Below, piece after piece: positions 7,111 through 47,523 of a DNA stretch of 64,000 nt. The notes under the pieces were generated by a model that was not told the DNA's origin, ran no database searches, and saw only the letters and a list, made by a program, of their open reading frames with translations. The DNA comes from Glycera tridactyla (lineage: Eukaryota). Position 1 is the stretch's first letter; every line of letters starts with the position of its first letter. The translations under genes were made by a program, and so were the position numbers. Location: positions 75,206,001 through 75,270,000 of the forward strand of contig OZ286469.1 in NCBI GenBank assembly GCA_965644265.1. Reading direction: 5' to 3'.

Positions 7111-7240
7111 TCATCTAGAGCACACAGTTTCTCATTAGATGTCACTACACCTTAGTGCTCCATTCGTTCACCATCAGATGGCCCCAAACTCTGGAGCCGT
7201 CACTACTTGGGTAGCTTCTGACTGGATGACTGAGGCTATT

Positions 7241-18914: not shown

Positions 18915-19700
18915 GTTCAAAAATACAGAAGCTAACCCCGGGGCTGTGGAGTGGTTCAGATGTTATCTATCAAGCAGGATCCATTGTACTCGTGTAAGTG
19001 GAGTGAAATATTCAGCTAAGGCCATAGCCTGTGGTGTACCCCGAGGTTCTATACTTGGACCTTCATTATTTATTGTGTGCATAAATAACTTGAGGGACTA
19101 TCTCACTGAATCTAAAATCAGTCTATATACTGACTACACAGCTATGTAGTTCAGCAGTCAATCAGAAGTGGAACTCGTGCTCAGTTTTAAACTTGACCTT
19201 GATATTGTTCGTGAATGGCTGAAAGCAAACCGCCTGATTCTCAATGTTACCAAAAATAAATATATTATCTTTAAGAACCATAAAAGTGCCTGAAGGAGTT
19301 TGAATTATACCCTGACAGTTGGAATAATCCTATTGAACAAGTCCCTGTTTTCAAATATCTTGGTCTCATCCTAGATGACAAGTTGACTTTCAATGAGCAT
19401 GTGGACCACTTGCACCGTAAAGCAACCAGCATATTAGCCATGTTGAGAAGACCTAGGAATCTTTTGGATCACACTACAGCACTCATGCTATATGTGTTTT
19501 GTTCTACCACACATAGATTGTTGTGATGTGATTTATGAGTGCACCAGCTCTGCAATTCTAAATGAACTGCAAAATATTCAAAATTGTGCATGTAGAACTT
19601 TACACTTGCCTGGTTCTAATCGGAGTATTGAAGAACAACACAAAACTCCACAGCTTTTACGTCTTGAAAACAGCCCATTAATTTTCTAAACCACAAAAAT
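18915..19700 (+). mobile_element. Degenerate L2/CR1-type LINE RT fragment
   Basis: WFRCYLSSR, CGVPRGSILGPSLF, LYTDYT, FKYLGLILDDKLTF, LQNIQNCACR; in-frame stops. Confidence 0.85.
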
Positions 19701-22279: not shown

Positions 22280-22503
22280 TTAACAGAATTGTTCTCCTTT
22301 GAGAAGTGCTACACACTGTCTAACTTTCTCAGGATCAGTGACTTTGTTGACAAACTCTGGTGGTGACAAAGTGCCACCCATGGAGACACCGCCGTGCTTA
22401 TACAACATCTGTGAAGCTGAGCTCCCACGCATTGAACCATGCACTTCACACGCCCCTGTTTCTCGAAGGACAAGTCCAAGATTTTGTTGTGTTATGCCAC
22501 CAC
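22280..22503 (-). CDS. CUTC: CUTC exon 8, terminal ([24 protein letters not shown]...QFC*)
   Basis: GGGI and H.S motifs; TAA at 22282-22280. Confidence 0.92.
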
Positions 22504-25500: not shown

Positions 25501-28500
25501 CGTATCAGAAACACTGAATGATATGATATTCTCCGAGACTAGTTAATGGCCTAAGAAATGACAGTGATGTACACTGATCAAGCTGGAAAACTGTGTTAGC
25601 GCCAAAACAATATTTCCTGTAGCGAGATTACTTCAATTTCGCCATCACTTTCATTCCAAACTGGTGTATTGCGTTCAAGGCATGGAATATCGGGATTTTC
25701 TAGCCCTCATATCATATATGGAACACATTTCTCTCGACCATGTGAGCTATATGAGAAGATTGAGTCCCCATTTTCATTTGCTTCATCCTAAAACCTCATC
25801 AAGTCCGACTTAAGACTCATAACTTTGATTAGCCAGCTGCCAGATATACAAGGTCCTGGTTGACTGCCTAATGGCTGGTACTGATGCAGACAACTCTCTT
25901 CAGTCATCACTGGGCGTGAACCATCACACTAATTGCTAGTTTTGCCCTTCAGTCAAAGCGCCTAATTTCCAGAGCGAGGTGAGCAGTGCCACATAAGCTA
26001 CACCTCTACAATCGCGTGCCAAATGTTCCCAGGACCTTTGGCACGCCAAAGGAAAAGAATAGGGCCTCTGTGTTTCCCTACATGTTATGAGAGGCGACTA
26101 ACTGGGAGTCCAGTACATGCAGACTGGAATATCAAAGGCCAGCCATTGTGAAGAAGTCTGTTCCAATATACAAGTAAAAGAAACATTGCTGCCTTTCGCA
26201 GAGTCGGGACTGCCGCCGGTAGCGGTGCCTCTTTTCTTTGGCATTTTCAGATTTTCAAGGAGGTTGCAAGGACGTTAAACTCAAACAAACAAACCGTTAC
26301 AATATCAAGCTGTCTGAAAATCACCACGTCATCCTGACGTGGTTGGAATCAGCAATACACAGAGCAATTATCATTGGTCACAGCTCATCCATTCCCGGGT
26401 GAGACGTGCGATTAGCCCGCTGAATTATTAGGCAATGGTTGATTGCTTAGTAGTGTAATTCTGTAGAAAATTCAATGATGATGAACCTCATCACACAGAC
26501 ACACGCGCGCTCGCACGCACGCATGCACACATGCATGCATGCACACATGCATGCACGCACGCACATCAGTCCCCATTTCATTCAGAGACTGACCTGTCGT
26601 TGGAGTTGATGAACCTCATCACACAGACATACGCGCGCTCGCATGAACGAACGCACGCACGCACGCATGCATGCACATCAGTCCCCATTCCATTCAAAGA
26701 GACTGACCTGTTGTTGGAGTTGTGCCACCCTCCATCAAATTACCGCACAATTCCACACGGTTAGCACCTGAAAGATGAATATTACTTGGAGCAACAAGGG
26801 GTAACATGTGAAAATTAAGGACAAGTTGACAACGAATACGACGACAATGACAATGAAAACAAGTTTCAATGTTGGAGTTAAGATAATGGGCATACACGAA
26901 GGGTTGTAATGGTTGGTTGTTTTCCATCTTGTTGACACCGACCTGGCTATGTTGAGATATCCATGGCAAGGACATGTTAAGTGGGATCTATCAAGACCCC
27001 TCCTGTTAGGTCCCAAACAGAAATTGAAAATCAATGGAATTCGCAGGAACTCAATGAGTCATTTCTGAACCCACCCTGCATGCCTGTACAGCTGGCTTTG
27101 AATACATTACAGTTACCTATGATGCACCATGGGCGTATATTGAAGGTGTGGGTGGCGGTAGTGTTTCGATGATCACCCGATTGGATCGATTACTGCATCG
27201 TTGAGACGTCCTATCTGATTGTCGCCCGCCCTGAAGGCGGGCGATCTCGAATACGGGGTTAGTTCTGGCGTATGAGAGCCGTCATTAGTCATGGAGGCTT
27301 TTCAGTGTGTCAAGCACTCAAAACGTTTGAGAAATCCCATACTGAATTCTCTCTATTACGAGTCAGCAGTAGGAATGGGTACCAGTCTACTGTACGAGAG
27401 TTCGCTACCATCAGCTTGAACTGAACTACCTCCCGAACAGCGTCACGTTCAGGGTCGTTTGCACACTTCTAGTTCTACCTACTAACACTATGTGGCACTT
27501 CATGATTATTTTTTTTGATCAACGAATCCAATGATTCTCAGTGCATAAATGGATAGCTGGAAGGAGGGAAAAGAGGATGGATGTATGGATGGATGGATGT
27601 ATGGGTGGATGGATGGATGGATGGATGGAAGAAGGGATGTATGGATGGCTGGGTGGGAGAATGGATNNNNNNNNNNNNNNNNNNNNNNNNNNNNNNNNNN
27701 NNNNNNNNNNNNNNNNNNNNNNNNNNNNNNNNNNNNNNNNNNNNNNNNNNNNNNNNNNNNNNNNNNNNNNNNNNNNNNNNNNNNNNNNNNNNNNNNNNNN
27801 NNNNNNNNNNNNNNNNNNNNNNNNNNNNNNNNNNNNNNNNNNNNNNNNNNNNNNNNNNNNNNNNNNNNNNNNNNNNNNNNNNNNNNNNNNNNNNNNNNNN
27901 NNNNNNNNNNNNNNNGATAAATGGATGGATAGATGGGAGAATGGATGGATGGAAGGAAGGAAGGATGGTTGGCTGAATGGATGGATGGGTGGATGGGTGG
28001 ATTGATGGATTGAAGGAAAAGAGGAAGGATGGATGGATGGATGGATGGATGGATGGATGGATGGATGAACGAATANNNNNNNNNNNNNNNNNNNNNNNNN
28101 NNNNNNNNNNNNNNNNNNNNNNNNNNNNNNNNNNNNNNNNNNNNNNNNNNNNNNNNNNNNNNNNNNNNNNNNNNNNNNNNNNNNNNNNNNNNNNNNNNNN
28201 NNNNNNNNNNNNNNNNNNNNNNNNNNNNNNNNNNNNNNNNNNNNNNNNNNNNNNNNNNNNNNNNNNNNNNNNNNNNNGGATGGATGGGANNNNNNNNNNN
28301 NNNNNNNNNNNNNNNNNNNNNNNNNNNNNNNNNNNNNNNNNNNNNNNNNNNNNNNNNNNNNNNNNNNNNNNNNNNNNNNNNNNNNNNNNNNNNNNNNNNN
28401 NNNNNNNNNNNNNNNNNNNNNNNNNNNNNNNNNNNNNNNNNNNNNNNNNNGATAAATGGATGGATAGATGGGAGAATGGATGGATGGATGGATGGATGGA

Positions 28501-28569
28501 AGGAAGGATGGGTGGCTGGATGGATGGATGTGTGGATGGGTGGATTGATGGATTGGAGGAAGAAAGGAA

Positions 28570-28603
<34 letters not shown>

Positions 28604-31055: not shown

Positions 31056-34000
31056 AGATCAATACCTGTGTAGTTTGTGGAGGGAAGGCCGGAACCTTAC
31101 CTGAACCTGAGGTTAGTTTCCTGTGGAGCCAGTCGTATCCTCTAGTGCTTTGAGGCCTTCAGCGCAGAACTTTCCTAAGGCAAAAGCTATATGTTTGGTT
31201 GGAGCCTTCAGGGTTTGGCAAAATTTAGCGGTGCGGTCAAGGTTGCTGTAACCTGGTATGTTTTCTTCACAGATTTTGGATAAAGGTAAACGGGCGTGAG
31301 TGAGTTTGGAGCAATCTAATATAAAATGCATTTCATCACCAATTTCTTTCGGACAAAAGTGGCAAAAACGGAGGTTGGCTAGGATGTTTGTGTATCATCC
31401 TTTCTCTATTTCTAGTCTATGGGAACTGAGGCGCAACCTGGAAATTGCTTTGCGGGCATGTGAGTTACTGATGAGGAACAGGTATGGTTCTGGTATGAAG
31501 GAATCTTTTAACATTGCATATTTGCGCATTGTGTTGCCTTGCCCTGGGAGACGTCCCTGAGGAGAGTTTAAGGCTGACATACTCAATGAGACATAATAGT
31601 CTCTAAGAAGTTCCGTGGAGTGTGTTAGATCTATATCACGAGCTGCATTAGGGTCATCAACATTGGCATCTAGGTTGATCGAGTTGAAGATATTTTGGAT
31701 GTAGGTGGCCCAAGAGTAAATATTTTTGGAGTGTTGGTTAATGGCACAATGTAGGGCTTCCTTGGCAAGGGTGTTGTCTAGGGACATGATTCGGGCCCAG
31801 TTTTTGATACTTTGTAATTTGATGCAATATTCAAGTGGGAGATGGGCAACTTCCAGGCGGGTGGCATTGCTACTGGTTGTTTTACGGACTCCCAAGATAG
31901 ATTTTATATATCTGGTGTGGGTACGCTCAAATGGAGTGGAGTCTATGGAGTGTAGGAAGTCAAATGTTCTATTATTGCGCGATGCTCTTGCTAAACTCAT
32001 GGTACGTTTACTGTCAACGTCCATGAGCCAGATATCGGCATTATATGTTAGTATAGGTCTGACTAGAGAATTAAATAGTCTAAGTGAGGCGGACGTGAGT
32101 AGCGTGGCCTGTTGGGTGAGGGACCTCATCTTGAAGATTGCTTTTAGACCTTTGTGGCTCAGCGTGGCCATAGCATCTGAGAATGACCCTCGGCTGTTGA
32201 TTTCAATGCCGAGGTAGTTGTATTTTTGGCATGATGGCAAGGGAATGTTATTGTAGGTGAATGGGTGTGTTATAGGTTGGTTACTTTTTGAGAAGGTCAT
32301 TGTATTAGACTTAGAGAAGCTGAGATTTAGGCGCCATTTGGAGTTGAACTGGGCTAGTTGTTCCAGTGAGTTCTGTAGACCATCTTTGGAGGTTGAGAGA
32401 AGGATGAAATCGTCTGCCAACAGGAGGCATGGGACCGGAGTATCTACCAAGTGGGGAGGGGCACATTCATCGTCAAAAATTTCTGGCATGTCATTTATGT
32501 AGACATTGAATAGGGTCGGGCTCAAATTGTCCCCTTGTTTGACCCCTAGCTCGCTAGAGAATTGCTCACTTCGCCCACTGCTGAATTTCAGTTGGCTTGT
32601 CGTTTCACAGTACATGCTCCTGATTAGATTGATACATGAGTGGCCCACTCCAAGCTTTTGTAATTTATATATTAGGCCAGGTCTCCATACAGTGTCAAAA
32701 GCTTCTGCATAGTCGATGAAGCATGCATATAATTTCCCACCAGGGGGGCAAGGTATTTTTCTATGAGGGTCTTGAGGATGAGCACGGGATCAGAGGTTCT
32801 GCGGCCAACTGTAAAGCCATGCTGGAACAGGTTTAGTTTAGTCTTGAGTACCTGTAGGATCCTCTCATCGACAATGCTGTTGAACAGTTTGGACAAACAG
32901 TTTGTGAGAGAGATGCCATGATAGTTGGCTGGGTCAAGGGGGTTGTCTTTCTTGTGGATGAGGATCAGGTTGGAGTTGTTCCATGTTGTAGGGTACTTGC
33001 TATCTCGCAAAATACAGTTGAATAATTTGTGCAATGAATTTTGAATTTGAATTTGAAAAACTTTATTAGACTCTGGATTGGGGTGGCTAAGTGACCATAT
33101 TTCCCCATCAAGAGTATAAACACAACATAATACAATGTAACAATACAACATATATACATAATTACACATATGAGCAAAAGAAGAAAGGGTAAGTAGAAAA
33201 TAAAAACGGTCATTGAGAAAGTACTAATTGGAAAAACTTTGTGTCAATGCATCAATTGATTTAAATTACTGATAGCAAGTAATAATAATTCCACAGTCAC
33301 ACAGGTTTAAGTACATGTACTAGTAAAATGCTTGAAAACTTTATGTAAACAGTACCAATTCTTATTAGAAACAAATGGATTAGCTTCAGATTGAGAAGGC
33401 ATACTAGTTGGTATAGCTTCATGTAAATGCATCAGACATGTACTATTATAGCTAGTGAGAAATAACACTTCAGCAGATATACTTATATGTACAACAAAGT
33501 TGTTTGCGAACTTTATATAACCAGAGCTAATCATAAATGGAGCAACAAGACTAGCTTCAACTAGAGCATATAACAGGCTAGTTAGGTAACATACTATACA
33601 CATCAATATATGAACATGAATAATGCTTATATGCAAATCAAATACATTCAAGTAAGAGCATCCGCTTCAAGTTAGTGCTTGAAGTGCACTGCTATATTTG
33701 AGTAGGAGAAGTCACATCGAGTCAATGCTAAGAAAGCATTGTTATATTTATATTCAATTGAACAGATTAGCAATGTATTCATGAATCACCACAGTATGAG
33801 TGGTAAGGTTAGGCAAAAACAGTGTATAAGGCTACATTAGAGATTGTGATAATGAAATTTCAGTTGTGCATCTCTGATATTGTCATCAAGCTGGTATTCA
33901 GAGTCATATTTCATTTGATAAAACCAGTTTGTGAACCTAGATGAAATTCTAGGACATTATACCATTAGACTTAGGTAAGTTCAAATGTAATTCATGAAGT

Positions 34001-37000
34001 CAAAAATCAAAACCGCAGAGCCATTTTGCATATCAAAAGTAAGAAAACGTGGTAGTTATCACAAAAGGCTTAGGCTTTTTTCAAGTCTTCATAGATAAAA
34101 GGCTTTTAATTTCGATTTGAAATTATCAATAGAAGGGGTGGTACGTATGTCTAAAGGTAGCTTATTCCACAGGGTACCGCTTTTTATAAAGAAATTCGCA
34201 TCAGCACATTTTAATATAGTTCTTGGGATTTTCAGTAACCCACTGGTACAGGATCTCGTGCAGTATTTAGTATGAGGTAGTGCTATAGGCTGGTATTTCT
34301 CTTGATAAATAGTATGAAGTCTAGAAGAACAATTGCCATTGATTATTTTATATAATTCACAGAGAGAATGTATTTCCCGTCTATCATCAAGAGCTATAAA
34401 ACCACTATGCTTAAGCAAGACACTTGATGAAGTACGTTTGTCTTTGCATAATACTGCTCTGAGACAGTTGTTATACGCTACATGCAATCTAGCTTTGAGC
34501 TGTGCACCAAGGCCAACAAGCAAGACATCAGCATATTCAAAAAGTGGCACAATTAACGCCTGTGTCAGGTGTTTAGCAAGTGGTGTATCATTATAATTAC
34601 GCACTCGCCATAATAAACCAGTGCGTGACTTAACCTTGCAAACTATTCGTTCAACATAATCTGCAAACGTGAGTTGGCAGTCTAACATGACTCCCAAATA
34701 TTTAAACATAGCCACACGTTCAAAACCCAGCACTAAGTTGTCATTTGAGGTAATCGTTGCCAATTTTTGTCTGGTCCCAAATTGCATGTATTTGGATTTT
34801 CCACGGTTCAGTGTGAGTCGATTTTTAGAGAACCATGTTTTCAGGGCATTGATATCAGGTCCTAATTTCGACAAAATAGAATATTCATCTGATCCAGTGG
34901 CAAGGATAGCGGTATCATCCGCATACATGAAGATTTGGGAATTATTGATAATTTTAGGAATGTCATTGATGTAAAGTACAAACAGAAGGGGCCCAAGGAT
35001 GGACCCCTGAGGCACCCCGAGACTGATTTCACAAGGTAATGATATTTCCGTTCCAAATTTTGTGCACTGTATTTTTTCATGCAAATACGATTCAAACCAT
35101 GTTAGTGCTGAGTTTCTGAAACCAAGATATTTAAGTTTCGACAGAAGAAGTGTATGATCAACGGTATCAAAGGCTTTTGTCAGGTCCAGGAAGACCACCC
35201 CACAAGCAAGACCACTATCCATAGCTTCAAAAATTGTATTACAATACATCGATCATCACTGGCGCACTCGTTTTATAATTTCATTGGGGACCAGGTCTGG
35301 GCCGCAGGCTTTCTGGGGCTTCAGCTTACTAATGGCAGTTCAGATTTCTTTGTAGTTTATTGGTGAGTCCGTGATGGGGTTTGTGTCAGCGGGATTTCAA
35401 AGTGCCCTGCTTGCTTGAAGTATGTCAAGGTGTATGTCCTTGAGGGGGGTGTCATCTTTGGCCAAGGCAGAAAAGTATTTGATAAAGTCTGGGATGTTTG
35501 GTGGGTCCTCACATGGTTGAGTAGTTCGGAGTTTCGAAAGAGTTCCCCAAAATTCTTTGGTTTGTTTGGGAGAGAGTGAGTTGAGCTCATCAATTATGCT
35601 CTCATTGAATTCCCTACTTTTTTTCTTTTTCTCTCTTTTGGCAAGTCGGCACAGTGCATGGAAGTGTTCCCTGATCGAGTCACCAATGGAGGTGGCTCAG
35701 GATAGGGATCAATACTGGAGCACCGCCATCTAGTGGCAGGTCAGTGAAAGTGTGCTCATTTACATAACAATGCCGTTCGTATCGGCGCTAGAGCCGCGAG
35801 TGTGCGCTTCCTATCCCTGTAATTATACAAGTACACAGCGACAAGGACACGATGATTGCCGACTTCAATGATGTTCATGTAATGAGAGGGGAGATTTGAC
35901 ATCAGATTATAAACAGGGAAAGAATTATGTTTTCGTGATATATATATTGAATGGCTGTAACGTTAGGAACATTCAAAGTTTTTCGCACTTGATCTCTGAA
36001 TTGAAATGAAATGAAATATAATTTATTTGTACTGGTCATATAGCAAAAACACTCAATTTCCGTATATGGGCTAATCTGTCATTCCTGCATATTGCTATGA
36101 TATTCTGGTCACAATTAATCAATGTGTTCCAAGTCGGTGCTTTCAGATATATATCACGAGGAGTGCTCCTAACAACTTGGAAAGTACCAGATTTGATGTT
36201 TCGGCAGCTTAAATTGACATGGCACCGGCAGTAATGCTTCAGGGTGTTCGGTTCAACAAAAGATATAATGTTCTCAAAAAGTATTATTTATTATAATTGT
36301 GTGTCAACAATGACAGAGTGCGATTTCAGTTGCGAAAAACGTTAGCGTACTTTACTCGAGCTTGGGACCCTGTCGCACAGGCGGTCGGAACGATGATCGC
36401 GGTGGATGCTAAGTAAAATAAAATGAGAAGGTACTACACTCGGCCGGGATCCGTCTCCCGCGGATTTTCTCCTTAGCACCTTGACCCCAAGTTTCGACTT
36501 TGATTAGATGAATTAAAACAGGAATCGTTCACTCAATCATGTTCCTATAACCCTTCTTGCAACCACCAGGTCTGTATTGACTCGGCACCTTGAAGTTTTC
36601 ATTCAAGAAATGTGTGTGTGAAATTTGTGTTGGGATGTTTACTCTGGATTTGGACCAGCATGCAATGCGAAATTCTCCTGGTACCCTCTCACCCATGTTC
36701 ACTGGGGGGTTCTTGTAGCATGACAGGGATTCGGCCATCTTGGATTCATGAACTATCTGAAATTAAATCTGCCTGCTCCTAGTCGATTTACATGAAATTG
36801 GAGGGGCACAGGACATTATTGACTGGTTATGTACGTAGATAAATTTGTTTTCTACAGTCTCATGCGAGGAGGGACATTTTTGGTGCTCATTTAACAATGA
36901 AATCCAGCTTGTACTTGGACAAGTCAGATAAGCTGCCCAGCTCCGATCGCCGAGTGTAGCACCTTCTCTCATTCACTACCCTACTTGCAACTCGATCCGC

Positions 37001-37835
37001 GCATCTGTGCCCTGTCGGCCACAGTCCCGACAAGGAAGATTTCGCCCGTGGTTCAGGGCTCGGGTCCACCAAGTATATAAGATAAAATAAATACTTTATT
37101 GACACCTAATCCATATACTGACATCGGTACTACAGTGAACAAAGAACTACACAAAACATAATCATGAAACATAATACAAGTAATTAGAAAATACTGAGGG
37201 GATTTATACAGACTCGAATTGGCATACATTCATCAATTTATCATTACCAGTATTTGCATATATTGCACAAGAAAAAAAAATGATATAATACATATGGAGT
37301 TACAATTATCTTCCTTTCCTTCCCAGACACTCACACATACACACATACTGTCACACAATCAAACGCTCGATTATCACCTGATTATATATCGCCACTTTCG
37401 CTTTCAGCAACACGTGGTATGACGACAGGGCATCTTCACCAATGACCACCTGGGCAATGGATCAGCTCACAGTCTGAGTCAGCTCGAAATATGGCCGGTG
37501 AGGTGGGGCTGAATGCTGCCATTCTTAAATTGTTTGACACTAGTCAAAGAACTCATTGACGTTCTTTGCACTAGTAAATCGAGGTCCCAATAAAGAACTG
37601 GTGTCTGAGACCTGGCTGAATTACGCTGAACCGCCAGTTCCCCTTGGAGCCGTAAGGGGGCGTGACTCGCAAAGCACAGCAAGCGACACTCGGCAGCGTG
37701 GCAGTCTTTGTGTAACCCGCAGCATTTGTTTGCAAGAAAACCTTGGTTGTGACAAAGAAAACTGTGTGAATAAGAGAACCTACCCCCTTGTTGTGCGTTG
37801 AGCGTCGACTCTACGCTGTCAACGCAAACCTCCAT
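22280..37835 (-). CDS. CUTC: Copper homeostasis protein CutC homolog, 8 coding exons, 744 nt, 247 aa
   Basis: Exons 37784-37835, 26708-26767, 25100-25268, 24538-24578, 24241-24276, 23781-23914, 22907-22934 and 22280-22503 join in frame with GT-AG boundaries. CutC motifs [52 protein letters not shown] and PGGGI are present. Confidence 0.95.
22907..22934 (-). CDS. CUTC: CUTC exon 7 (AKDRIIVVP)
   Basis: 28-nt micro-exon; TTACAG| and CAG|GTAAGT boundaries. Confidence 0.85.
23781..23914 (-). CDS. CUTC: CUTC exon 6 ([28 protein letters not shown]...INR)
   Basis: 134 nt; RVLTSG motif; TTTTCAG| and CGG|GTGAG boundaries. Confidence 0.93.
24241..24276 (-). CDS. CUTC: CUTC exon 5 ([12 protein letters not shown])
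   Basis: 36 nt; PVTFHR motif; TTTGTAG| and G|GTAAGC boundaries. Confidence 0.9.
24538..24578 (-). CDS. CUTC: CUTC exon 4 ([14 protein letters not shown])
   Basis: 41 nt; frame-compatible with both neighbours; CCAG| and G|GTGAG boundaries. Confidence 0.85.
25100..25268 (-). CDS. CUTC: CUTC exon 3 ([28 protein letters not shown]...GILN)
   Basis: Core CutC motif; 169 nt; ACTAG| and AG|GTAGGT boundaries. Confidence 0.95.
26070..26298 (+). mobile_element. SINE-like family C, representative copy (about 5 copies)
   Basis: GACTGG.ATATCAAAGGC...GGTAGCGGTGCCTCTTTT...GGA(C/T)GTTAAAC plus (CAAA)n. Other copies near 4670-4885, 9630-9690, 44770-44965 and 55625-55840. Confidence 0.8.
26475..26720. repeat. 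Tandem duplication (114-bp offset) with (GCAC/GCAT)n that copies the CUTC exon 2 donor
   Basis: GAGACTGACCTGT.GTTGGAGTTG occurs at 26585-26608 and 26699-26722. Confidence 0.85.
26708..26767 (-). CDS. CUTC: CUTC exon 2 ([20 protein letters not shown])
   Basis: 60 nt, phase 1-1; TTTCAG| and CAG|GTCAGT boundaries. Confidence 0.92.
27550..29500. repeat. About 2-kb (GGAT)n satellite with N runs, in CUTC intron 1
   Basis: Directly visible; N runs at 27667-27915, 28076-28277, 28290-28450 and 28762-29224. Confidence 0.95.
30295..30800. mobile_element. Non-autonomous DNA element with a 33-bp subterminal minisatellite
   Basis: Poly-G-TACTC end; five units of GACCC(C/T)ATGGGATCGGCCCTACCCAGA.AAATT at about 30359-30515; one further unit near 30721. 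Confidence 0.55.
30865..35700 (-). mobile_element. 5'-truncated RTE-X-like LINE (RT plus C-terminal CCHC), interrupted by an L2-type insertion
   Basis: 35251-35700 encodes [31 protein letters not shown]; the element resumes at 33040 with [36 protein letters not shown], then [30 protein letters not shown] and [18 protein letters not shown]. Frameshifts are present. The clade call is tentative. Confidence 0.8.
33041..35250 (-). mobile_element. 5'-truncated L2/CR1-type LINE with uninterrupted 386-codon RT ORF (34089-35249)
   Basis: [41 protein letters not shown]; about 1 kb 3' region ending in AATAAA (33067-33062) plus a (TTCAAA)n tail. Confidence 0.9.
36340..37075. mobile_element. Non-autonomous DNA element with diverged inverted arms
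   Basis: ATGAGAAGGTACTACACTCGGC (about 36423-36444) is nearly complementary to GCCGAGTGTAGCACCTTCTCTCAT (about 36949-36972); internal GGCCATCTTGGATT motif. Confidence 0.5.
37784..37835 (-). CDS. CUTC: CUTC exon 1 ([17 protein letters not shown])
   Basis: First in-frame ATG at 37835-37833; donor GGGG|GTAGGT. Confidence 0.88.
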
Positions 37836-38022
37836 TTCCTTCAGAAGAAAGCGCGGTCTTGAGCAGTTGAGTCCCAGGGGTGAACTTGGGATATCTCCAG
37901 CCTCGTTTTGACACGACGTCCTAAATATAGATTGGGGAAGCCGTCCCTCGAGGTCGCACGTAGGCTGGCGTTTCGCAGACACTTGTCACGCTTTCGTCGC
38001 CCGATCAACAACTGTCATCAAA
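37836..38022. promoter_or_regulatory. Bidirectional promoter and 5'UTRs shared by CUTC and COX15
   Basis: 187 bp between the divergent ATGs; visibly CpG-rich compared with the CpG-poor introns. Transcription starts are inferred, not seen. Confidence 0.75.
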
Positions 38023-38109
38023 ATGTTATCACGGTGTTTACTCAGCTCAAGATGCGCTGTATTTAAATCGCTCGGTTACAGCTCGAAGTTTGCTTCCACT
38101 GCTAAACAG
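38023..38109 (+). CDS. COX15: COX15 exon 1, mitochondrial presequence ([29 protein letters not shown])
   Basis: R/S/L-rich leader without acidic residues; AAAATG start context; CAG|GTAAGC donor. Confidence 0.8.
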
Positions 38110-41100
38110 GTAAGCATTTCACTGACCGTGTGTGTTGGACTGACTTTATCAACTGACAGCTGACAGACATGTTATGAAACAGAGGTTTGTTGATTCTGAC
38201 TTATGATGATGGGTATGTCTGGGTGTGCATCCCTCAGGCTCAGTGCCATAGCACATGTCATTCTCATATTTGTTGGTGGGGAATGCATTTCTGGTACACA
38301 GAACTTCTCATTTGAATGCAGTGGTGCCTTTGAATGAGATTGTCAAACTTATGTAACTACCTCTGAGAAAGTTATGTAAGCATCAAGTTTTTCATCTACA
38401 GGACTCCATCACCTAGGTAGTAAGGACAACGGGTTTTGGACTTTTCAGGAAATCTTATGCAAACTATATATCACTATAAAGAATAAATGGAAAGAAACAC
38501 AACAGTGCAAAAATCATGTTGATACACCGATTATTAAGGATAATATGGCCTTTTTTCAAAAATTCGTGAGTGAGACTTTTCTGCCGATTTTGAGATAAAT
38601 TTGGATTTTGGGTTTCCTTCCAAAAAACCCTAAAATATTTTGGAAAAACACAGTTCTTTGACATCTGGTGAAAGCCTGAAGCAAAACCTTGACATAAGTG
38701 AAAGAATTAACATGTTTCCTTCATTTATGGCTGAGATATAGCCTCCTGAATAGCAAACCAGAACACCATTTTAAGTGGTGTCCTAGTTTGTTGCCGCAAA
38801 TTTCAAATCTCTCTCGCAAAAGAAACTTAAATCTTCTGGCATGCCATACATATTTGGTACCAGCTGAAAGCTTGGAAAGAGAACTCATTACCAGTGAAGG
38901 ATTTGATCTGATATGTCCATTCATGACAGAGATATAGCCATTTGAATTATTAGCTAGGAGGACATTGTCACTGATGCCAAAGTTCACATTTGTGAATTTC
39001 AAAATCTCAAGACCCAAATTTTAAATATTCAGAAAACTATACATATTTGGTACCAGCTGAAAGCTTGAAGCAGCACCCTGTCATTTCTGAAAGAATTGGC
39101 CTGATATGTTCATTTATGGCAGAGTTACAGCCATTTGAATAACAATCCAGGATGAAATCTCCATTTTTGGGGGTGCTGACGAGGGATAGTGTTTTGCTTT
39201 GTGGTTTGGGCAACGTTGGGCAACATGCCACTTGCACATTCAGCACATCATTTTTTTCTACAGAACCTGGGCTTCCTGAAAAACATCCTTTCACTATCCT
39301 TTCGGGCACAGCATCAAGGTGAAAAAATGCTCTAAACATTGGGAAAGTTTGAGGCATGATGCGACTATATACAGAGGCCGAAACTCAACAAAATTCACAT
39401 CCAGTGAGAGTGCATCAAGTTCTGAGTGTGATTGGCTTGGTTTCCATCCCATAATCAGGAAATCCAATGAGGAGTGATACTTGAAATGAGACCTGCTTCG
39501 ATCTGAAATCAAGTGTCAGCCCCCATGCTGGATTGAATTTTCACTGACACCCCATGTTTGGGCACCCAGATTTCCACCAAATAAATACAGAATTAATGTA
39601 ACTAAGGCACGGATCAAGTGGGCAACATCTCAAGTGTGTTCTGTGCAAATTTCGTGGCAATTGTATGAAAACTCTTGATGCAATCAGCAATTCACATGGA
39701 GCATTTTAACATGGTGACAGATAGGGATCGCGGAATCGGCGATATCGTTGGCCTCGCTAACCTAGGAGTATTCATGCTAGTCCCAGCTCTCACTGGGCAG
39801 TGAAAATGGATTGGCCCAGAAACATAAAATCATGTCCATGTATACTTTCCTGTAAATGCATGGAGTTGACAAATCAATAATGATGATAATAATACCATCA
39901 TAATAATGATAATAAATGTATCACTGATGATCATAGAATAATGAACGCTGTTCATTTATCATATATTTGAATGAAATGTGTAGAAATGGAATTTATTTAC
40001 TCTATTTTGTCCTTGTATGCATATGTTACATCCACACACAAGCGCTTATCTGCCTCTCCTTTCCTAACCCCTCCACTCTCCCCTCTATGGTACTGTAGGG
40101 GTTGATTCCAGAGGCAGCTCATCTGACCCTCTATTAGTTGCACAGATCTCTCCCCCATGACAGTAGCTGAAATTCTCACTGTCTTTTATTCTCAAGCCCT
40201 CAAACATCCATAGTTGGAGCTCATCCCCTCTTCCTTATTGCAGAGTCTTCAAACATTCAAAGTATTGACAGCACAACAATCTTCAACATTCAGCAGCCTT
40301 GTTGGAAAATGTTCGCTCATTCCAAAGCAGGTATGTGCATGTGTGTTATTTGCTCCACTGTGGTAAGGATGTACGATGGAGCATATATACCCAGTGGGAA
40401 ATGTGCTGTGGTACTTGGTCATAGTATAATCATATTCAGTGTTCTGAGGATTCCTGTAGTTTCGGAATTGGCAATTTTAAGATCAAGCCTGGAAATATAG
40501 AAAAATGATGAGATTTTGTATGCAATTTCCTCGAAGTCTTAGAGCTTGCTGGAAGTTCCACTTTTTTGTGGTCAAACAGTTTCAACAGAAACACATCTCA
40601 ATCACGAATCCAAAGTGAGATTGCCTGTGTAATGATCATGCCACATGAAAGATTCAATTTGGAGAAGATATTGGGGTGGACTATTGTGAATAGGCCAATA
40701 CCAGCAGAGATATCACACAAATTGTGTCGATCAGGGGTCATGTTCACCTGTCAGCCATTCAGCAGTAACAGCCTCTTGGAACCTGTAAAGAGCCCTTGAT
40801 GCCTGGGTGGTGGTGGCAGCACTGTATGATTGTATAATGCATCACATGCCACAAGGTGCACCAGACATGCTCTCACTTGTCAGGTGGCCGGTGGAAATGA
40901 GAAATCTTGCTTAGATTATCAGGACAAGACAAGATAGCAACTAACCTCTCCGAGGTTAGGTAGATTCTTGTGTCATGTAAAACCATTTCAACTGATGAAA
41001 TGATAATCCATAATATAGCTACTTCGATAATGTATGCAGTCTTCACGAAAAACTTTTTCAGCCACTCTCCCATCGGGAGAGCAGATTGGGAGAATCACTC

Positions 41101-44100
41101 TCCCGAAAATGAATTCACTCTCGAATTTGTGCAAGTCCCACTGATACATATTTTCCTGAGGTTAGTTCTTCAGAATCATACATGTGCAGGCAAATGCAAA
41201 GCCTACTCACAGGGACCAGGTATTATTGTTGTAATCAAAATTGTGGTGTTCTGTCTTCACAGAAAATCCATCACTCTCACATCAACTGAAAAATTTCCAC
41301 TCTCCCATCGGGAGAGTGAGTTGGAAGTTTCACTTTCCCGAAACCAAATCCACTCCCCGGGATTCGGGAGAGTGCTAAATTTGAAGACTGTGTATGACTG
41401 ACAGATAAATAGACTATTTTTCCATGGTTATCCGATGGCATGGCTGGTGAACCCTATGACAAGAGACTACCTCTGATGGGAGACTGATTCCTCAGGGCAA
41501 CTTTTATGTTGGAGAATAATTCAACTGTCCCACTGAAAATTCATCACCCATGAACTATGCAAGCTGTCATATGTGAAAGATATACAAGTTGCTTGGAGAC
41601 TGGTAGCTCTGATATCTGGACATAGTAAGTAGCTAATGTTCTGATATGAGCATGCAAGTTTTCACAATTGACTGCTATGAGTATGGGCCAGTGGAGAAAA
41701 ATATTCTACGTGCCTCATTTCTTGCAGGTCATTGCTCCTCTCCGACAGACAGCTACCCAGGCTGGAAAAGTGGCAGCTGAGCGCGCATTCCCCGATATCT
41801 CAGAACATGCACAAAAAGTGGTTGGTAGATGGTTGGCGGTGTGTTCAGGGATGGTGTTTGGAGCAGTCTGTATAGGTGGTCTAACAAGGTTTGTATCTGT
41901 ATATCACAAAACAAGCCATGAATGTTGTATCACTCATATATTAGGTACTAACATGAATGAAGTATATGATGTCATACTATGATTGCATCTGAATTATCGA
42001 AATAGATTTGCCATCACATTCGAAGGGCTATAGATAATGATGGAGTGGAGAATAAGTACCAATATATTTATCATCTGTATTCCTTGAGATAAAATAGGTC
42101 ATGGTCCCTAACCACGGATGTCAGATTTATATGTGTTCTCGCGCTGGATACACTCAGATATGACAGAATTAGGCTGGTGACATTCGTCCCATATGCACAT
42201 GTGATCCTTCAACCCTGCTTACAGGGCATGACAGTGTGAGCGCATCCTTCTGTGTGTCTGTTTGCAAGACATCATTTTGGGGGAATGATTCTGTAGTTGG
42301 CGGAAAATTGTCAGCTTTATTTGCCTTTTTATTTACCTGGTGAAGTCAAACCTGTTCAAGGGATCAGCTCTCTAGAAGAGGCTACCCTGAGCTGTGACAG
42401 TATTTTCAACTGTGAATGACCTCTCTACAATGGTCACTTTTTTAGGTGACCGAAGGTGATCATTGTAGACAGGTTTAACTATACAATATCTATTTCTTTG
42501 TTGTGAGTGTGCTGTGACTGATAAGCATTGGTGTACATTTACAGGTTGACAGAATCCGGTCTTTCTATAACCAAATGGGATCCGATATCCGGCACAATGC
42601 CACCGCTCAATGAGAAGCAATGGGAGGAAGAATTTGAGAAGTACAAGGCATATCCAGAATACAAATAGTAAGTGAAACCTACATTAATGATGCATGAATG
42701 TGATAGGGAGCTGCAATGTTTCTCTGGGGGTGATTGGTGCTATAAGTTATATACACTCAGTTTGTTCTACCCTAAGATCAGAAAAGTTGTGAGGTGTGTA
42801 TAATTGCAAAAATTTGGATTTTGATATTTTGTGGCTGGTGATTTTGTTGCAGCTTGGAACGAGATTTGACGATGAAGGATTTCAAGTTTATCTACTTCAT
42901 GGAATGGTTTCACCGGAACTGGGGCCGAGCCACAGGCATGGTGTTTCTCTTGCCAGCTATCTATTTCTGGAGGAAGGGGTATTTGGCAAAAGCAATGCGA
43001 CCACGAATCCTTATTTATGGTGTTCTTCTTGCTTCACAGGTACCATTTGATTTTTTAACAACTGGCAGTGTTTCTCACAAGTGCATTCCAGTGTATTCAG
43101 ATCAGATTGGAATGTAAACTCCCCTCCAAAAAAAAGCTGCCAAAAGCCATCACTGCTACGTATATTTGCTCAGTACCAAGCTGTTTGTGATTTCCGATGT
43201 TTTTCAGACATATCGTGAGTTGAAGAGGTTGTGACCCTCCTATCCCCATGTCTACGTTTTTTATCTCTCCACCTGAGAATTTACAGCCCCTCCCCCCCCC
43301 CTTTTCCCAACATTGAATGCAGGCATATTGTTTACCCTGGAATTCTTAACCCTACAGAACTTTACTGCCCAATCAGACTGGCAAAAGCACTTCCGTCCTG
43401 TCGTCAACCGCCCCACAATTCTGCAAACCCCAAATGTCAGATGCAGGAGGTCAACATCAGCTCCCTTACCCCCAACATCTGGATTTCACAGCACCTCATC
43501 CTCAATCAATTTTTCGACAGCTTATGACCCTGGAACCCGAATGGATTTTCACTCCACAGCATTGAATCGGATAACCCTGGGTGTATCTGGTACAGTTGAA
43601 CTTGTCCTAAGCACGAAGACAAAGGAAGTGATGAAATCATTTGCTTAGAGCAAGTTCATGCTTAGTAAGGTCATTTTTAGTGAAAAATTCTCTGGTAGGA
43701 TGAACAGAAATTTGTTGCTTAAGGCAAGTTCTTGCTTAGGACAAGTTTGACTGTGTCTCTGTAATCATCTCTATGTTTGCTCCACTTCAGGCAGTGATGG
43801 GAATTGTGATGGTGAATAGTGGATTGGAGGACCGGCCGGACTCCCATGAAATGCCTCGTGTCAGCTCCTACCGTCTCGCCTCACATCTTGGACTGGCACT
43901 CTTCCTTTATGTCAACTTTGTCTGGTCATCTCTCTTACATTTATTACCTCCTGCTAAGGCGAGTTATCATATTCTTCCACAAAACTCATGTTTGCTGGTT
44001 GTTAGTATGGAATAAACTTAGTCTGAGCCCTACTGTCACTGATTGGATAGGTTTTTCAAATCTTTGAGGGTTTCATACTATTAATAGATTTTAAAAACTG

Positions 44101-47100
44101 TTCATGAACCCTGCACCAGTATCAAAATTTACTTGCAAATTCATGAAAACATATAAGATATACATTTGAATAATTGAAACAAATTCATGTCCACCCACTG
44201 CATCTATTGGGAAGATGGCAGCCATGATCGATCTGTGGACTCTGGATGAGGTGGAACTTCAAAATAGGAAGTAGAACTATTACATTTTTATCCTAAGTTT
44301 TGTTTGAATACAGAAATATCCGTCAGGAGCTGAGATAATATATTGTATCAAAGCACACATTGATAGAAAGCTCAGAGATGTGCAGGAATTGTGAACTTTT
44401 AATTTTTTGTTTCCGGATGAATCATTGTGATCATGATCATTCTTACCATAGCTATTAATCCAATGATTTCATGAGCAGAGAATACTAATTGACATTTTTT
44501 TTCTTTCTTTTGTAGGATTTAGCCAAGGTAAGACTCACTTCTCATATTCTATTTATTATCGCATCATCTTGCTGTATAGGCAGCTCACAGTGGCGCGAGT
44601 GATATCTTCTGCAAAATTTCTTGAAGTGAAATATGTTTTGCCTGGCAAATAGCTGATAGCCTTGGATCATTTTCCGGATACATGTATCTGGCATACTCGG
44701 TGTATCAAGAACAGTCGATGGAAATGATAGATCCATTGTAGCAGTATGATTAGGGACCAATCTCCCAAATCCAGTGCAAGCTGACTGAGATGTAAAAAGC
44801 TGCCTGTGTGTATAGGAGTGAAATCCCGTTTGCTCATTAAACAAGCTGCTGTCTTTCAGGATTGCTCTGGCAGTGGTGCCTCTTTTCTTCAGAATTTGCA
44901 TTTCTACGGTTTGATATAACCCAAGCTAGTTGAAAGTATGTCAAATTCGAACAAACTAACAAATAAACCTAATCTAAACTAATCCATGGGCTTGATGACA
45001 ATGATAACAACTGGCTGTGAGCTATGTGGATTATATAATTTCATTGAAATGCTTGTCCCTAGCTATTGGAAGTGCTGCTGATGATTCCTCATCTTACTCT
45101 ACATACATGTATATATTATAGATATGCTATGTTTTATCACTTGTGCAAGATTCATTCATTCATTCATTGTTACAGTAAATGTATAGCCGATATTGATCCA
45201 CTGTGGTCATTACAGGTCTTGATCTCCCTGAATGAAGGAAACTCCAATCTTGCTCATGATTTTGCTTTCAGTTTGTCAAAACTAAACAAGTAGCCAAGTT
45301 GAGTGGACTCACACATGCTGCTATGGGATTGGTCTTCTTCACAGCTCTGTCAGGTATTTTAATAGCATCTTGCATAGCTTGAGAATGAGCAAGAATTCAT
45401 ACTAATTGACATACTATATCATCTTACATCATCGGCTAGTGTAAAGACACCTATTGATTTTGGGGCAGCCATCTTGAATTTCAAGTCAAAATTGTTTTTG
45501 GAAAATAATTTGAAAAGTTCCAGGGCTAGCCATCTCAATCCTGGTGCATAGGCTCTCCTATGGGCGGCCATCTTGAATTTCAAGGTCATTGAGTGCAAGA
45601 ACGTATTGGTTTCATTTCTGTATCTCGCTTCTCATCCTGTGACATCCATGCACTCAGCAGGGCATTCACACTCACTGAGTGCGCCTGGTTTGTATCAATT
45701 CTGAGTTCGTTGGCATTTTTGGATTGCACCACTGGGTGACTATAACTTTTTTAAGGCAATCAGAGACAACAATGGCAATAACATCAACAAGAAGGCATCA
45801 ATTCTCAGTAGCCAGTGAAATTGTTCTGGGATTGTTTGCAAAAAATGCTCCCTCCTCTGAAATCTGAGGAGCCAAATTTTGCCGATTTTGGGAATCCTGG
45901 ATGTAATCCTGCATCATTCTCTCTTCATGTTACAGGTGCCTTTGTAGCTGCTCTGGATGCAGGTCTTGTATACAACAGCTGGCCTAAGTTTGCTGACCGT
46001 TGGATCCCCAGTGATCTCTGGGCATTGGAACCAAAATGGAAGAACTTCTTTGAGCACCACACGATGACACAATTCAACCATCGTCACTTGGTATGTATAC
46101 CATATACGCATTGCTCTATACCTGGCCATTACTCCAAACACCCAAATTTCTGTATTACTAGTTGGGAGCTAAAAACCTACACATTTGTGACCAGTTGGGG
46201 GTTGTCATTTCCCGGTTTGATTGATTTGTTAGAAATTCAAAACCAATAGGATGTGCAATTTGGATTGATTTTTATAATTTAGTGCTACTGGTAGTAAATT
46301 GAGACATTTTCAGCAAGCTCAATCACATTTCAAAAATATCTGTCTGTCTAATTGCAGTTATGTGGATAAAATCATCATTGCCTTTTCTGAATTCGAGTCT
46401 GTCGACCTTGTCCAAATTAAAAATTGAATACTGGAGAGGATATCTCGATACTAAATACTAGAGAAGAAACAGGTTGTTTCCACCATGTAATCTCTGACTA
46501 ATCTACATCTCATGAGTTATGAGTTGACCCCACTTTCGATCGGGACAGGGGCTGATAATTCTTCTACCAAAGTACCAGGAAAATTTCCAAAAGTCATGTG
46601 ATCCCAATTCATCCTTGAGTTCTCTGATGATGTAACAAAGTGGTATTTGCTGATAAAATGGTGAGTTGGTACCTTGATCTTTCTTTTCTTTTTGATAGGT
46701 GTACTGTGCACTGCCAAACTGATAATCTCCTTAGTTTTCAGAACATTGAGTTTGTTTCTTCTCACGTTATCCCATGTCATATTTTCAGGGTGAGTTTACT
46801 GGTTGCCTCGTCCTTGGTTTGTGGTTTATCAGCCGACGAACACCGTTACCAGCACGAGCAAAGATAGCAATGAATGTTTTTGCTGGCGTGACACTTTTCC
46901 AGGTGAGTGCGTGTGTGTGTGTGTGCTTGTGTGTGTGTGCATGTGTGCGTGCGTGTGTGTGTGTGCTTCATTCATGATGAACACTTATGTCAGGATCTTC
47001 ATTGTTCAAATGATTGGCGAGTCACCACAAAATTTGATTACTGGTCAGAATGACAAAATAATCTTAAAGTTCTCTGCGTAATAGATAAATCAACAAATAT

Positions 47101-47523
47101 TGAAAAAATCTGCTCACTGTTTAACAGAAAGACTGGAGATTTGGGTCTGTCCATGTTTCATTGGCGATAGGGGGCAGATAGGAAGCAATTTCAGAATTCA
47201 GGAGTGGGTTTCTCGCAGGATATTTAATTAGGAGCAGGGGGAGCGAGATCTTAATTCCGGGGTATGTGAATGATGTCGATCCTCTGCATTTGGAATTCCA
47301 GGGTGGTCATAATCGTGGAGATGTGTTTTGGGGTTGGAGGTCAGAATTTCTCACTCATGTTTTCATCATCTGCTTTTATCTTTCGTTTCAGATTTCACTT
47401 GGAATCGCTACATTATTGGCATATGTGCCAGTCTGGCTTGCTGCCACACATCAGAGTAATTCTGTTGCACTTCTCACCACAGCAGTATGGGCTGCACAGG
47501 AACTCAAACGTATTCCCAAATGA
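38023..47523 (+). CDS. COX15: Heme A synthase COX15, 10 coding exons, 1296 nt, 431 aa
   Basis: Exons 38023-38109, 40244-40330, 41728-41888, 42545-42667, 42853-43039, 43791-43958, 45272-45353, 45936-46090, 46789-46902 and 47392-47523 join in frame. Motifs [44 protein letters not shown] and ATHQ are present. Lengths of exons 4-9 (123/187/168/82/155/114) match human COX15 as I recall it. Confidence 0.95.
38400..39450. mobile_element. Non-autonomous DNA transposon-like element with internal direct repeats, COX15 intron 1
   Basis: ACATATTTGGTACCAGCTGAAAGCTT twice; TCATTTATGGC.GAG.TA.AGCC-type motif three times. Confidence 0.5.
40244..40330 (+). CDS. COX15: COX15 probable exon 2, leader region ([29 protein letters not shown])
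   Basis: 87 nt, open, phase 0-0; TTCCTTATTGCAG| and CAG|GTATGT boundaries. No homology support. Confidence 0.6.
41037..41390. mobile_element. 354-bp MITE with CAGTCTTCA terminal inverted repeats and 6-bp target duplication TGTATG
   Basis: TGTATG at 41031-41036 and 41391-41396; internal palindromic CACTCTCCCATCGGGAGAG repeats. Confidence 0.8.
41728..41888 (+). CDS. COX15: COX15 exon 3 (...[23 protein letters not shown])
   Basis: First transmembrane helix motif; CTTGCAG| and AG|GTTTGT boundaries. Confidence 0.92.
42344..42480. mobile_element. Tc1/mariner-type MITE
   Basis: Inverted termini AGTCAAACCTGT and ACAGGTTTAACT. Confidence 0.65.
42545..42667 (+). CDS. COX15: COX15 exon 4 ([20 protein letters not shown]...EY)
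   Basis: 123 nt; TTACAG| and TA|GTAAGT boundaries. Confidence 0.95.
42853..43039 (+). CDS. COX15: COX15 exon 5 (...[16 protein letters not shown]...SQ)
   Basis: 187 nt; E..HR motif. Confidence 0.95.
43593..43753. mobile_element. Tc1/mariner-type MITE just upstream of COX15 exon 6
   Basis: Inverted termini CAGTTGAACTTGTCCTAAGCA and TGCTTAGGACAAGTTTGACTG; TA on the left flank. Confidence 0.75.
43791..43958 (+). CDS. COX15: COX15 exon 6 ([13 protein letters not shown]...[13 protein letters not shown]...PPAK), GC donor
   Basis: 168 nt if the donor is AAG|GCGAGT; the frame then joins the next exon. Confidence 0.88.
45272..45353 (+). CDS. COX15: COX15 exon 7 ([27 protein letters not shown])
   Basis: 82 nt; CTTTCAG| and CAG|GTATTT boundaries. 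Confidence 0.9.
45936..46090 (+). CDS. COX15: COX15 exon 8 ([23 protein letters not shown]...QFNHRHL)
   Basis: 155 nt; TTACAG| and TTG|GTATGT boundaries. Confidence 0.95.
46789..46902 (+). CDS. COX15: COX15 exon 9 ([17 protein letters not shown]...FQ)
   Basis: 114 nt; TTTTCAG| and CAG|GTGAGT boundaries. Confidence 0.9.
47392..47523 (+). CDS. COX15: COX15 exon 10, terminal ([21 protein letters not shown]...RIPK*)
   Basis: LGI.TLL..VP..LAA.HQ motif; TGA at 47521-47523. Confidence 0.95.
   Translation: MSLGIATLLAYVPVWLAATHQSNSVALLTTAVWAAQELKRIPK

What the first reader, a model, noticed from the sequence alone, without database searches (positions are those of the whole stretch)
37784..38109. 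CUTC and COX15 are head-to-head, 187 bp apart, as in human
Seen: divergent ATGs at 37835 (-) and 38023 (+) with a CpG-rich spacer. Known: human COX15 and CUTC are also head-to-head at 10q24, as I recall. COX15 makes heme A and cytochrome c oxidase also needs copper; the function of CutC is still poorly defined. Inference: retaining this pair in a distant invertebrate, despite heavy transposon turnover in both genes, suggests an ancestral bilaterian bidirectional promoter and possible co-regulation linking CUTC to cytochrome c oxidase biogenesis.
Basis: partly seen in the sequence, partly recalled or inferred. Interest (0 to 1): 0.72.

Follow-up and report, generated by a model that had tools for sequence, protein, structure and literature searches.

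The report
Ancient head-to-head CUTC–COX15 gene pair
Two intact genes, CUTC and the heme A synthase gene COX15, start back to back 187 bases apart in this invertebrate as they do in vertebrates; the same pairing occurs in a brachiopod, an acorn worm and amphioxus, so it is an old, often-lost example of an ordinary kind of shared-promoter gene pair, with no evidence yet that the two genes work together.

Summary
CUTC (minus strand, ATG at 37835, 8 coding exons, 247 codons) and COX15 (plus strand, ATG at 38023, 10 coding exons, 431 codons) are both intact. Their ATGs are 187 bp apart across the most CpG-dense spot of this neighbourhood. Spliced transcript contigs of a close relative join the 38023 exon to the downstream COX15 exons. 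They start at 37932-37967, at most 97 nt from the CUTC ATG.

My own survey used COX15 as anchor with 10 kb flanks.
- **Pair present, head to head:** Lingula anatina (166 bp spacer), Ptychodera flava (3.0 kb), Branchiostoma belcheri (4.2 kb, with a transposon fragment between).
- **No CUTC found:** Porites, a nematode, sea urchin, oyster, and the annelids Owenia and Paralvinella.

A single origin before the protostome-deuterostome split, followed by many losses, fits best. A 25-nt block of the spacer is shared with Lingula (11 of 2000 shuffles reach the score), which is suggestive only.

The proposed functional link between CUTC and cytochrome oxidase is untested and weakly grounded. This is an ordinary member of a known class (conserved 5'-5' microsyntenic pairs). 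Its phylogenetic reach is wider than I found documented.

The parts
37784..37835 (-). CUTC coding exon 1 (ATG at 37835; 52 nt, phase 1 end)
   Evidence: [18 protein letters not shown]; 16/18 identical to human CUTC 3IWP; donor GTAGGT.
26708..26767 (-). CUTC exon 2
   Evidence: Pfam CutC positions 19-40; AG/GT sites; phase fits exon 1.
25100..25268 (-). CUTC exon 3
   Evidence: Pfam CutC 40-95, E 1.4e-16; AG/GT sites.
24538..24578 (-). CUTC exon 4
   Evidence: [13 protein letters not shown]; AG/GT sites; matches amphioxus exon.
24241..24276 (-). CUTC exon 5
   Evidence: [11 protein letters not shown]; donor GTAAGC.
23781..23914 (-). CUTC exon 6
   Evidence: Pfam CutC 120-168, E 3.4e-9.
22907..22934 (-). 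CUTC exon 7
   Evidence: AKDRIIVVP; acceptor cag, donor GTAAGT.
22280..22503 (-). CUTC exon 8 with stop TAA (22280-22282); the eight exons sum to 744 nt = 247 codons + stop
   Evidence: Pfam CutC 174-201. The length equals that of Lingula CutC (247 aa).
37836..38022 (.). 187-bp divergent spacer between the two ATGs; CpG-rich putative bidirectional promoter
   Evidence: 15 CpG, o/e 1.14, GC 0.53.
37888..37912 (.). 25-nt block GGGATATCTCCAGCCTCGTTTTGAC, shared in the same orientation and at a similar distance from the CUTC ATG with the Lingula spacer
   Evidence: local alignment score 13; 11 of 2000 dinucleotide shuffles reach it. Not found in the other loci.
37922..37929 (.). AT-rich TATA-like element TAAATATA (Lingula has TAAATA just after the shared block)
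   Evidence: Its role and direction are inferred, not shown.
37932..38022 (+). COX15 5' untranslated part, minimum extent
   Evidence: table 8: contig 5' ends at 37932 (X3), 37947 (X1) and 37967 (X4). Contig ends are not mapped starts.
38023..38109 (+). COX15 coding exon 1 (presequence-like [29 protein letters not shown])
   Evidence: GT..AG joint 38109 to 40244 in all four runs.
40244..40330 (+). COX15 exon 2 (found only through RNA joints)
41728..41888 (+). COX15 exon 3
42545..42667 (+). COX15 exon 4
   Evidence: (Pfam COX15-CtaA 21-62).
42853..43039 (+). COX15 exon 5
   Evidence: (Pfam 65-123).
43791..43958 (+). COX15 exon 6 (the following intron has a GC donor; inferred)
   Evidence: (Pfam 114-170).
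45272..45353 (+). COX15 exon 7
   Evidence: matches P0270 residues 216-252; donor GTATTT.
45936..46090 (+). COX15 exon 8
   Evidence: (Pfam 199-252, E 3e-15).
46789..46902 (+). COX15 exon 9
47392..47523 (+). COX15 exon 10 with stop TGA; the ten exons sum to 1296 nt = 431 codons + stop
   Evidence: (Pfam 280-322).
31398..35252 (-). Two reverse-transcriptase ORFs (31398-32789, 34092-35252) inside the 11-kb first intron of CUTC, which also holds N gaps at 27667-29224
   Evidence: RVT_1 E 2e-25 each.

Best explanation
This is a conserved divergent (5'-5') gene pair inherited from an early bilaterian ancestor. CUTC and COX15 are transcribed away from each other out of one short, CpG-rich, presumably unmethylated promoter region. 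Because the two starts lie within about 100 bp, a breakpoint between them would damage the promoter of at least one gene. That slows separation of the pair but does not prevent it. Shown: both genes are intact; the spacing and CpG content; the COX15 transcript structure and its 5' reach; presence of the same pair in Lingula, Ptychodera and Branchiostoma; presence in vertebrates from the literature. Inferred: that CUTC starts in the same spacer; that the two promoters share elements (the 25-nt block and the TATA-like box); that the linkage is kept by promoter architecture rather than by a joint function.
For: Gene identities and intact models. RNA joints and 5' ends at 37932-37967. CpG enrichment. 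Vertebrate pair listed as a potential bidirectional promoter: PMC2871058 Tables S4/S5. Same pair head to head in B. belcheri (CUTC ATG 5804, COX15 ATG 10001), P. flava (3001 bp) and L. anatina (166 bp, present twice in a tandem duplication). Shared spacer block with Lingula. General class and its proposed cause: PMC3514665.
Against: No RNA was seen on CUTC exon 1 (depth 0 at 37694-37890), so its start site is unknown. The RNA evidence is assembled contigs of a relative about 94-97% identical, not reads of this animal, so contig ends are not true starts. In Ptychodera and amphioxus the ATGs are 3-4 kb apart, so a tight shared promoter is not universal. The pair is absent next to COX15 in six sampled invertebrates, including two annelids. 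The shared motif has modest, post-hoc significance.
Confidence: 0.78

Rival explanations
1. The linkage is kept because the two genes need co-regulation for a joint task: CUTC would act in copper or heme handling for cytochrome c oxidase alongside heme A synthase COX15.
For: The tight spacing is retained in distant phyla. Knock-down of animal CUTC raises copper sensitivity (review PMC11083455). A vertebrate block of metal-related genes around the pair was noted in PMC8199184.
Against: The pair is broken in most sampled invertebrates and in all 9 invertebrates of the 2010 survey. CUTC is reported as cytoplasmic/nuclear, binds Cu weakly and does not change cellular Cu levels. The E. coli copper phenotype that named the family is caused by loss of the MicL sRNA (PMC4102768). 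No co-expression data were available here.
Confidence: 0.12
2. The pairing arose independently in this lineage (and in Lingula) and only resembles the deuterostome arrangement by chance.
For: Two annelids, an oyster, a sea urchin and a coral lack it. The phylum of the window animal is not firmly established.
Against: The same two genes, in the same 5'-5' orientation, are found in at least five lineages, with spacers of 187 and 166 bp in two of them and a shared collinear 25-nt block. A specific adjacency among roughly 20,000 genes is very unlikely to arise repeatedly (inference).
Confidence: 0.06
3. The arrangement is an annotation or assembly artefact, or one partner is a pseudogene.
For: N gaps lie in CUTC intron 1. 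No RNA was seen for CUTC.
Against: Both reading frames are complete with consistent phases. All splice sites are canonical except one inferred GC donor in COX15 intron 6. The spacer itself has no gap. COX15 splicing is seen in four runs.
Confidence: 0.03

Closest known systems
Human/vertebrate COX15-CUTC divergent pair at 10q24 (PMC2871058 Table S5, entry 77)
   Same: The same two orthologous genes, the same 5'-5' orientation and a very short intergenic distance (given as below zero between gene ends in human). It is listed there as a potential bidirectional promoter.
   Different: That survey found it in 8 vertebrates only. Here it is in a lophotrochozoan-like invertebrate. Vertebrate CUTC has an N-terminal extension before MEVCVD (seen in the 3IWP numbering) that is absent here.
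Conserved ancestral microsyntenic pairs with 5'-5' orientation, e.g. HSPE1-HSPD1 (PMC3514665)
   Same: Non-paralogous neighbours, divergent orientation and a spacer under 1 kb, kept across phyla and explained by shared cis-regulation.
   Different: HSPD1/HSPE1 are subunits of one machine and are kept in nearly all species. CUTC and COX15 have no demonstrated joint function, and the pair is lost in many lineages.
Lingula anatina CUTC-COX15 locus (L012)
   Same: ATG-to-ATG spacer of 166 bp versus 187 bp; a shared 25-nt block followed by TAAATA at a similar distance from the CUTC ATG; the same CUTC length (247 aa).
   Different: Lingula carries a roughly 6-kb tandem duplication giving two COX15 copies and a partial second CUTC. 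Its spacer is AT-richer (GC 0.38).

Membership tests
CutC family (Pfam PF03932) | Sequence match to the family profile over its whole length | tested here: met
   Exon-wise Pfam hits cover profile positions 19-40, 40-95, 120-168 and 174-201. Exon 1 matches human CUTC 3IWP. The exons for positions 95-120 were found by homology to amphioxus and Lingula. The joined protein was not scanned.
COX15/CtaA heme A synthase (Pfam PF02628) | Sequence match to the family profile over its whole length | tested here: met
   Exon-wise hits cover profile positions 21-62, 65-123, 114-170, 199-252 and 280-322. The exons tile residues 79-452 of the full-length homologue P0258.
Bidirectional-promoter gene pair | Two genes in 5'-5' orientation with under 1 kb between their starts | tested here: met
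   ATGs are 187 bp apart. The COX15 RNA 5' end lies at most 97 nt from the CUTC ATG.
Bidirectional-promoter gene pair | Both genes are transcribed from the shared spacer | tested here: inconclusive
   COX15 contigs start in the spacer. No contig covers CUTC exon 1. Contigs cannot map true starts.
Bidirectional-promoter gene pair | Correlated expression or two-way promoter activity | not testable with these tools
   No expression series or reporter data were available.
Conserved ancestral microsyntenic pair (sense of PMC3514665) | Adjacency conserved across distant animal phyla, with orientation kept | tested here: met
   Present 5'-5' in Lingula (Brachiopoda), Ptychodera (Hemichordata), Branchiostoma (Cephalochordata) and vertebrates. 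Absent in six other sampled invertebrates.
CpG-island-like promoter | Local CpG o/e well above the genome background, with GC of about 0.5 or more | tested here: met
   37900-38099 has o/e 1.45 and GC 0.50, against 0.50 o/e for the window. The region is short (about 250 bp). Methylation state was not tested.

The most novel reading that the evidence does not exclude
The 25-nt block plus TATA-like box is a core-promoter element kept since the common ancestor of brachiopods and this (probably annelid) lineage. In that reading the persistent pairing reflects a real, undiscovered role of CUTC in the heme A / copper supply of cytochrome c oxidase.
Probability: 0.08. Interest if true: 0.65.

Novelty: new member of a known kind. 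Interest (0 to 1): 0.3.

Why it matters
It moves a gene pair catalogued only for vertebrates back to about the protostome-deuterostome ancestor. It also gives two very short invertebrate spacers (187 and 166 bp) in which a shared promoter could be dissected. It adds one well-defined case to the known class of conserved 5'-5' pairs. It gives a mild but testable hint about the poorly understood CUTC protein. It does not change any concept.

Tried and rejected
- **Rfam scan of the window:** no family reached threshold.
- **tblastx of the related loci against the window:** no further shared neighbour genes, only reverse-transcriptase fragments.
- **COX15 anchors P0079, P0108 and P0113:** these proved to be transcript contigs or intronless microeukaryotes and gave no animal synteny.
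- **Paper search for COX15 + CUTC + bidirectional:** nothing. The supplement of PMC3514665 is not held, so I cannot say whether the pair is in its list.
- **Search for the shared 9-mer in the other loci:** negative.
- **Naming the animal from COX15:** failed. The nearest sequences are unlabelled transcripts (66% identity), and the tree places them beside annelids with weak support.
- **CUTC start site:** it could not be seen, because the only runs found were chosen by COX15 words and had no contig on CUTC exon 1.
- **Motif leads:** leads typed from general knowledge of the two families were used only to locate candidate ORFs. Every exon was then checked by Pfam, PDB or homologue alignment.

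Full report
**Observation**

The window reads ATG on the minus strand at 37835, followed by [18 protein letters not shown] and a GTAGGT donor after 37784. On the plus strand it reads ATG at 38023, followed by 29 codons and a GTAAGC donor after 38109.

The minus-strand peptide matches human CUTC (PDB 3IWP) in 16 of 18 residues. Further minus-strand exons hit Pfam CutC, and plus-strand exons hit Pfam COX15-CtaA, with E-values down to 1e-16 and 3e-15.

The spacer carries 15 CpGs, with CpG o/e 1.14 and GC 0.53. The whole window has o/e 0.50, and only 0.7% of 187-bp windows hold as many CpGs. The densest stretch is 37891-38090.

**Gene models**

I fixed every exon separately by splice sites and reading phase and never joined them.

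- **CUTC** has eight coding exons: 37835-37784, 26767-26708, 25268-25100, 24578-24538, 24276-24241, 23914-23781, 22934-22907 and 22503-22280. They sum to 744 nt, which is 247 codons plus stop. All introns are GT-AG. The length equals that of Lingula CutC.
- **CUTC intron 1** is 11 kb long. It holds two reverse-transcriptase ORFs and the N gaps, which I left untouched.
- **COX15** has ten coding exons: 38023-38109, 40244-40330, 41728-41888, 42545-42667, 42853-43039, 43791-43958, 45272-45353, 45936-46090, 46789-46902 and 47392-47523. They sum to 1296 nt, which is 431 codons plus stop.
- **COX15 intron 6** needs a GC donor. This is inferred.

Both genes are intact.

**RNA evidence**

The only public runs that hold the stretch are four sets of assembled contigs from one study of a coded organism. 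They are about 94-97% identical to the window, so they come from a close relative or a divergent allele.

In all four runs the contigs are spliced with GT..AG joints: 38109 to 40244, 40330 to 41728, 41888 to 42545 and 42667 to 42853. This ties the 38023 exon to COX15 and reveals an exon (40244-40330) that homology had missed.

The contigs begin at 37932, 37947 and 37967. So the COX15 transcript reaches to within 97 nt of the CUTC ATG. No contig lies on CUTC exon 1, so the CUTC start remains unknown. Contig ends are not mapped transcription starts.

**What is known**

Dávila López et al. [quoted passage not shown] They also list it among potential bidirectional promoters under 1 kb (Table S5, entry 77). 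The species given are human, mouse, chicken, Xenopus, Fugu, Tetraodon, stickleback and medaka.

Their 64 species also included Ciona, Brugia, C. elegans, Aedes, Anopheles, Drosophila, Daphnia, Nematostella and Trichoplax. None of these is listed for the pair.

PMC8199184 notes the vertebrate block CNNM1-GOT1-SLC25A28-CUTC-COX15-ABCC2. I found no paper that mentions the pair together with "bidirectional". The supplementary pair list of Irimia et al. 2012 (PMC3514665) is not held.

**Own synteny survey**

I obtained organism-labelled COX15 proteins. For twelve of them I looked up the encoding contig with 10-kb flanks. Gene coordinates there are CDS coordinates.

| Species | Locus | Result |
|---|---|---|
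| Branchiostoma belcheri | L007 | CUTC head to head with COX15; CUTC ATG 5804 minus, COX15 ATG 10001, 4.2 kb apart; an integrase fragment lies between and is fused into the gene model |
| Ptychodera flava | L010 | Head to head; ATGs 3001 bp apart; an acceptor-like CAG just before the COX15 ATG hints at a 5'UTR intron |
| Lingula anatina | L012 | Head to head; ATGs 166 bp apart |
| Porites lutea | L001 | No CutC gene call and no tblastn match to the window's CUTC exons; species identified through 10.1101/2024.07.29.605683 |
| Nematode assembly GCA_001447655.1 | L002 | No CutC |
| Strongylocentrotus purpuratus | L008 | No CutC |
| Ostrea edulis | L009 | No CutC |
| Owenia fusiformis | L011 | No CutC |
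| Paralvinella palmiformis | L013 | No CutC |

The other three anchors (P0079, P0108, P0113) were transcript contigs or intronless microeukaryotes and gave no animal synteny.

In Lingula the arrangement occurs twice. A roughly 6-kb tandem duplication at about 95% identity copies CUTC exons 1-3, the spacer and nearly all of COX15.

**Which animal is this?**

Earlier notes of this scan call the genome a worm, probably an annelid. These notes are unchecked.

The nearest COX15 sequences are unlabelled transcripts. P0270 is 66% identical overall and up to 80% per exon, and it shares the unusual [12 protein letters not shown] motif.

In a tree, these transcripts sit beside the annelids Helobdella, Paralvinella and Ridgeia in the lophotrochozoan part, with weak support. 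I therefore treat the animal as a lophotrochozoan, probably an annelid, but not proven.

Even without that, Lingula alone puts the pair in protostomes.

**Interpretation**

The presences fall in Brachiopoda, the window's lineage, Hemichordata, Cephalochordata and Vertebrata. The orientation is identical in all, and two spacers are under 200 bp.

One origin before the protostome-deuterostome split with repeated losses explains this better than repeated gains of one specific adjacency among some 20,000 genes (inference). The sampled cnidarians lack the pair, so nothing places it earlier.

The frequent losses show that the linkage is dispensable. They include two annelids, an oyster, a sea urchin, Ciona and all sampled ecdysozoans. 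That fits the explanation of Irimia et al. for 5'-5' pairs with short spacers: a breakpoint inside a shared promoter is costly, so such pairs decay slowly. A joint function is not required.

**Promoter anatomy**

The window spacer and the Lingula spacer share GGGATATCTCCAGCCTCGTTTTGAC against GGGA-ATTCCCAGCCTCGATATGAC. The orientation is the same, and the block begins 53 and 34 nt from the CUTC ATG respectively. In both species a TAAATA element follows.

The alignment score is reached by 11 of 2000 dinucleotide shuffles. This is suggestive, but it was found post hoc and is not seen in other loci.

The TATA-like element at 37922-37929 lies 18-38 nt upstream of three of the four COX15 contig ends. 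It also lies about 25-30 nt from the shared block on the other strand. It could therefore serve either direction, but that is inference only.

**Function**

The idea that the pairing ties CUTC to cytochrome oxidase assembly has no direct support here.

- The copper sensitivity that named E. coli cutC is caused by loss of the MicL sRNA encoded inside the gene (PMC4102768).
- Human and C. elegans CUTC are described as cytoplasmic, with micromolar Cu(I) binding.
- Knock-down raises copper sensitivity without changing copper content (PMC11083455).
- Co-expression could not be tested.

**Limits**

- The profile search used an alignment in which each window exon was a separate row, given by reference.
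- N stretches were not filled.

**Verdict**

The ancient origin is supported and extended by new comparative evidence. The functional inference is unsupported.

The feature belongs to a well-known class, and the pair itself was already catalogued for vertebrates. Interest is therefore modest.

Noticed in passing
window 41040-41400 (COX15 intron 2): Very high summed contig depth (about 1000-3000) and dozens of partial, rearranged contigs in all four RNA-like runs. This points to an abundant transcribed dispersed repeat.
   Followed up: no
window 43959-43960: The only in-frame donor for COX15 intron 6 is GC (AAG|GCGAGT), so this is probably a GC-AG intron. No RNA was laid there.
   Followed up: partly
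window 43791-43830; proteins P0270, P0280: COX15 here and in the nearest unlabelled transcripts reads [12 protein letters not shown] where other animals have GLLGWYMVKSGL. This is a lineage-specific change in a conserved membrane helix. The protein as a whole is unusually divergent (at most 56% identical to labelled animals).
   Followed up: no
L012 2409-8316 and 8621-14329 (Lingula anatina): A roughly 6-kb tandem duplication at about 95% identity copies CUTC exons 1-3, the 166-bp spacer and nearly all of COX15. The 426-aa gene with no Pfam on record at 3983-8609 is a second COX15. It could be a real duplication or an assembly of two haplotypes.
   Followed up: partly
L007 798-8072 (Branchiostoma belcheri): The public gene model fuses an Integrase_H2C2 (transposon) part to CutC. 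The conserved CUTC start MEVCVD lies at 5804, so the model probably runs into an inserted element between the two genes.
   Followed up: partly
window 14243-15184 (-), 18826-19146 (+), 31398-32789 (-), 34092-35252 (-): Reverse-transcriptase fragments of non-LTR type lie around and inside CUTC. One of them also matches a fragment in the Porites locus.
   Followed up: partly
It lies downstream of COX15 and is not part of this finding.
   Followed up: no
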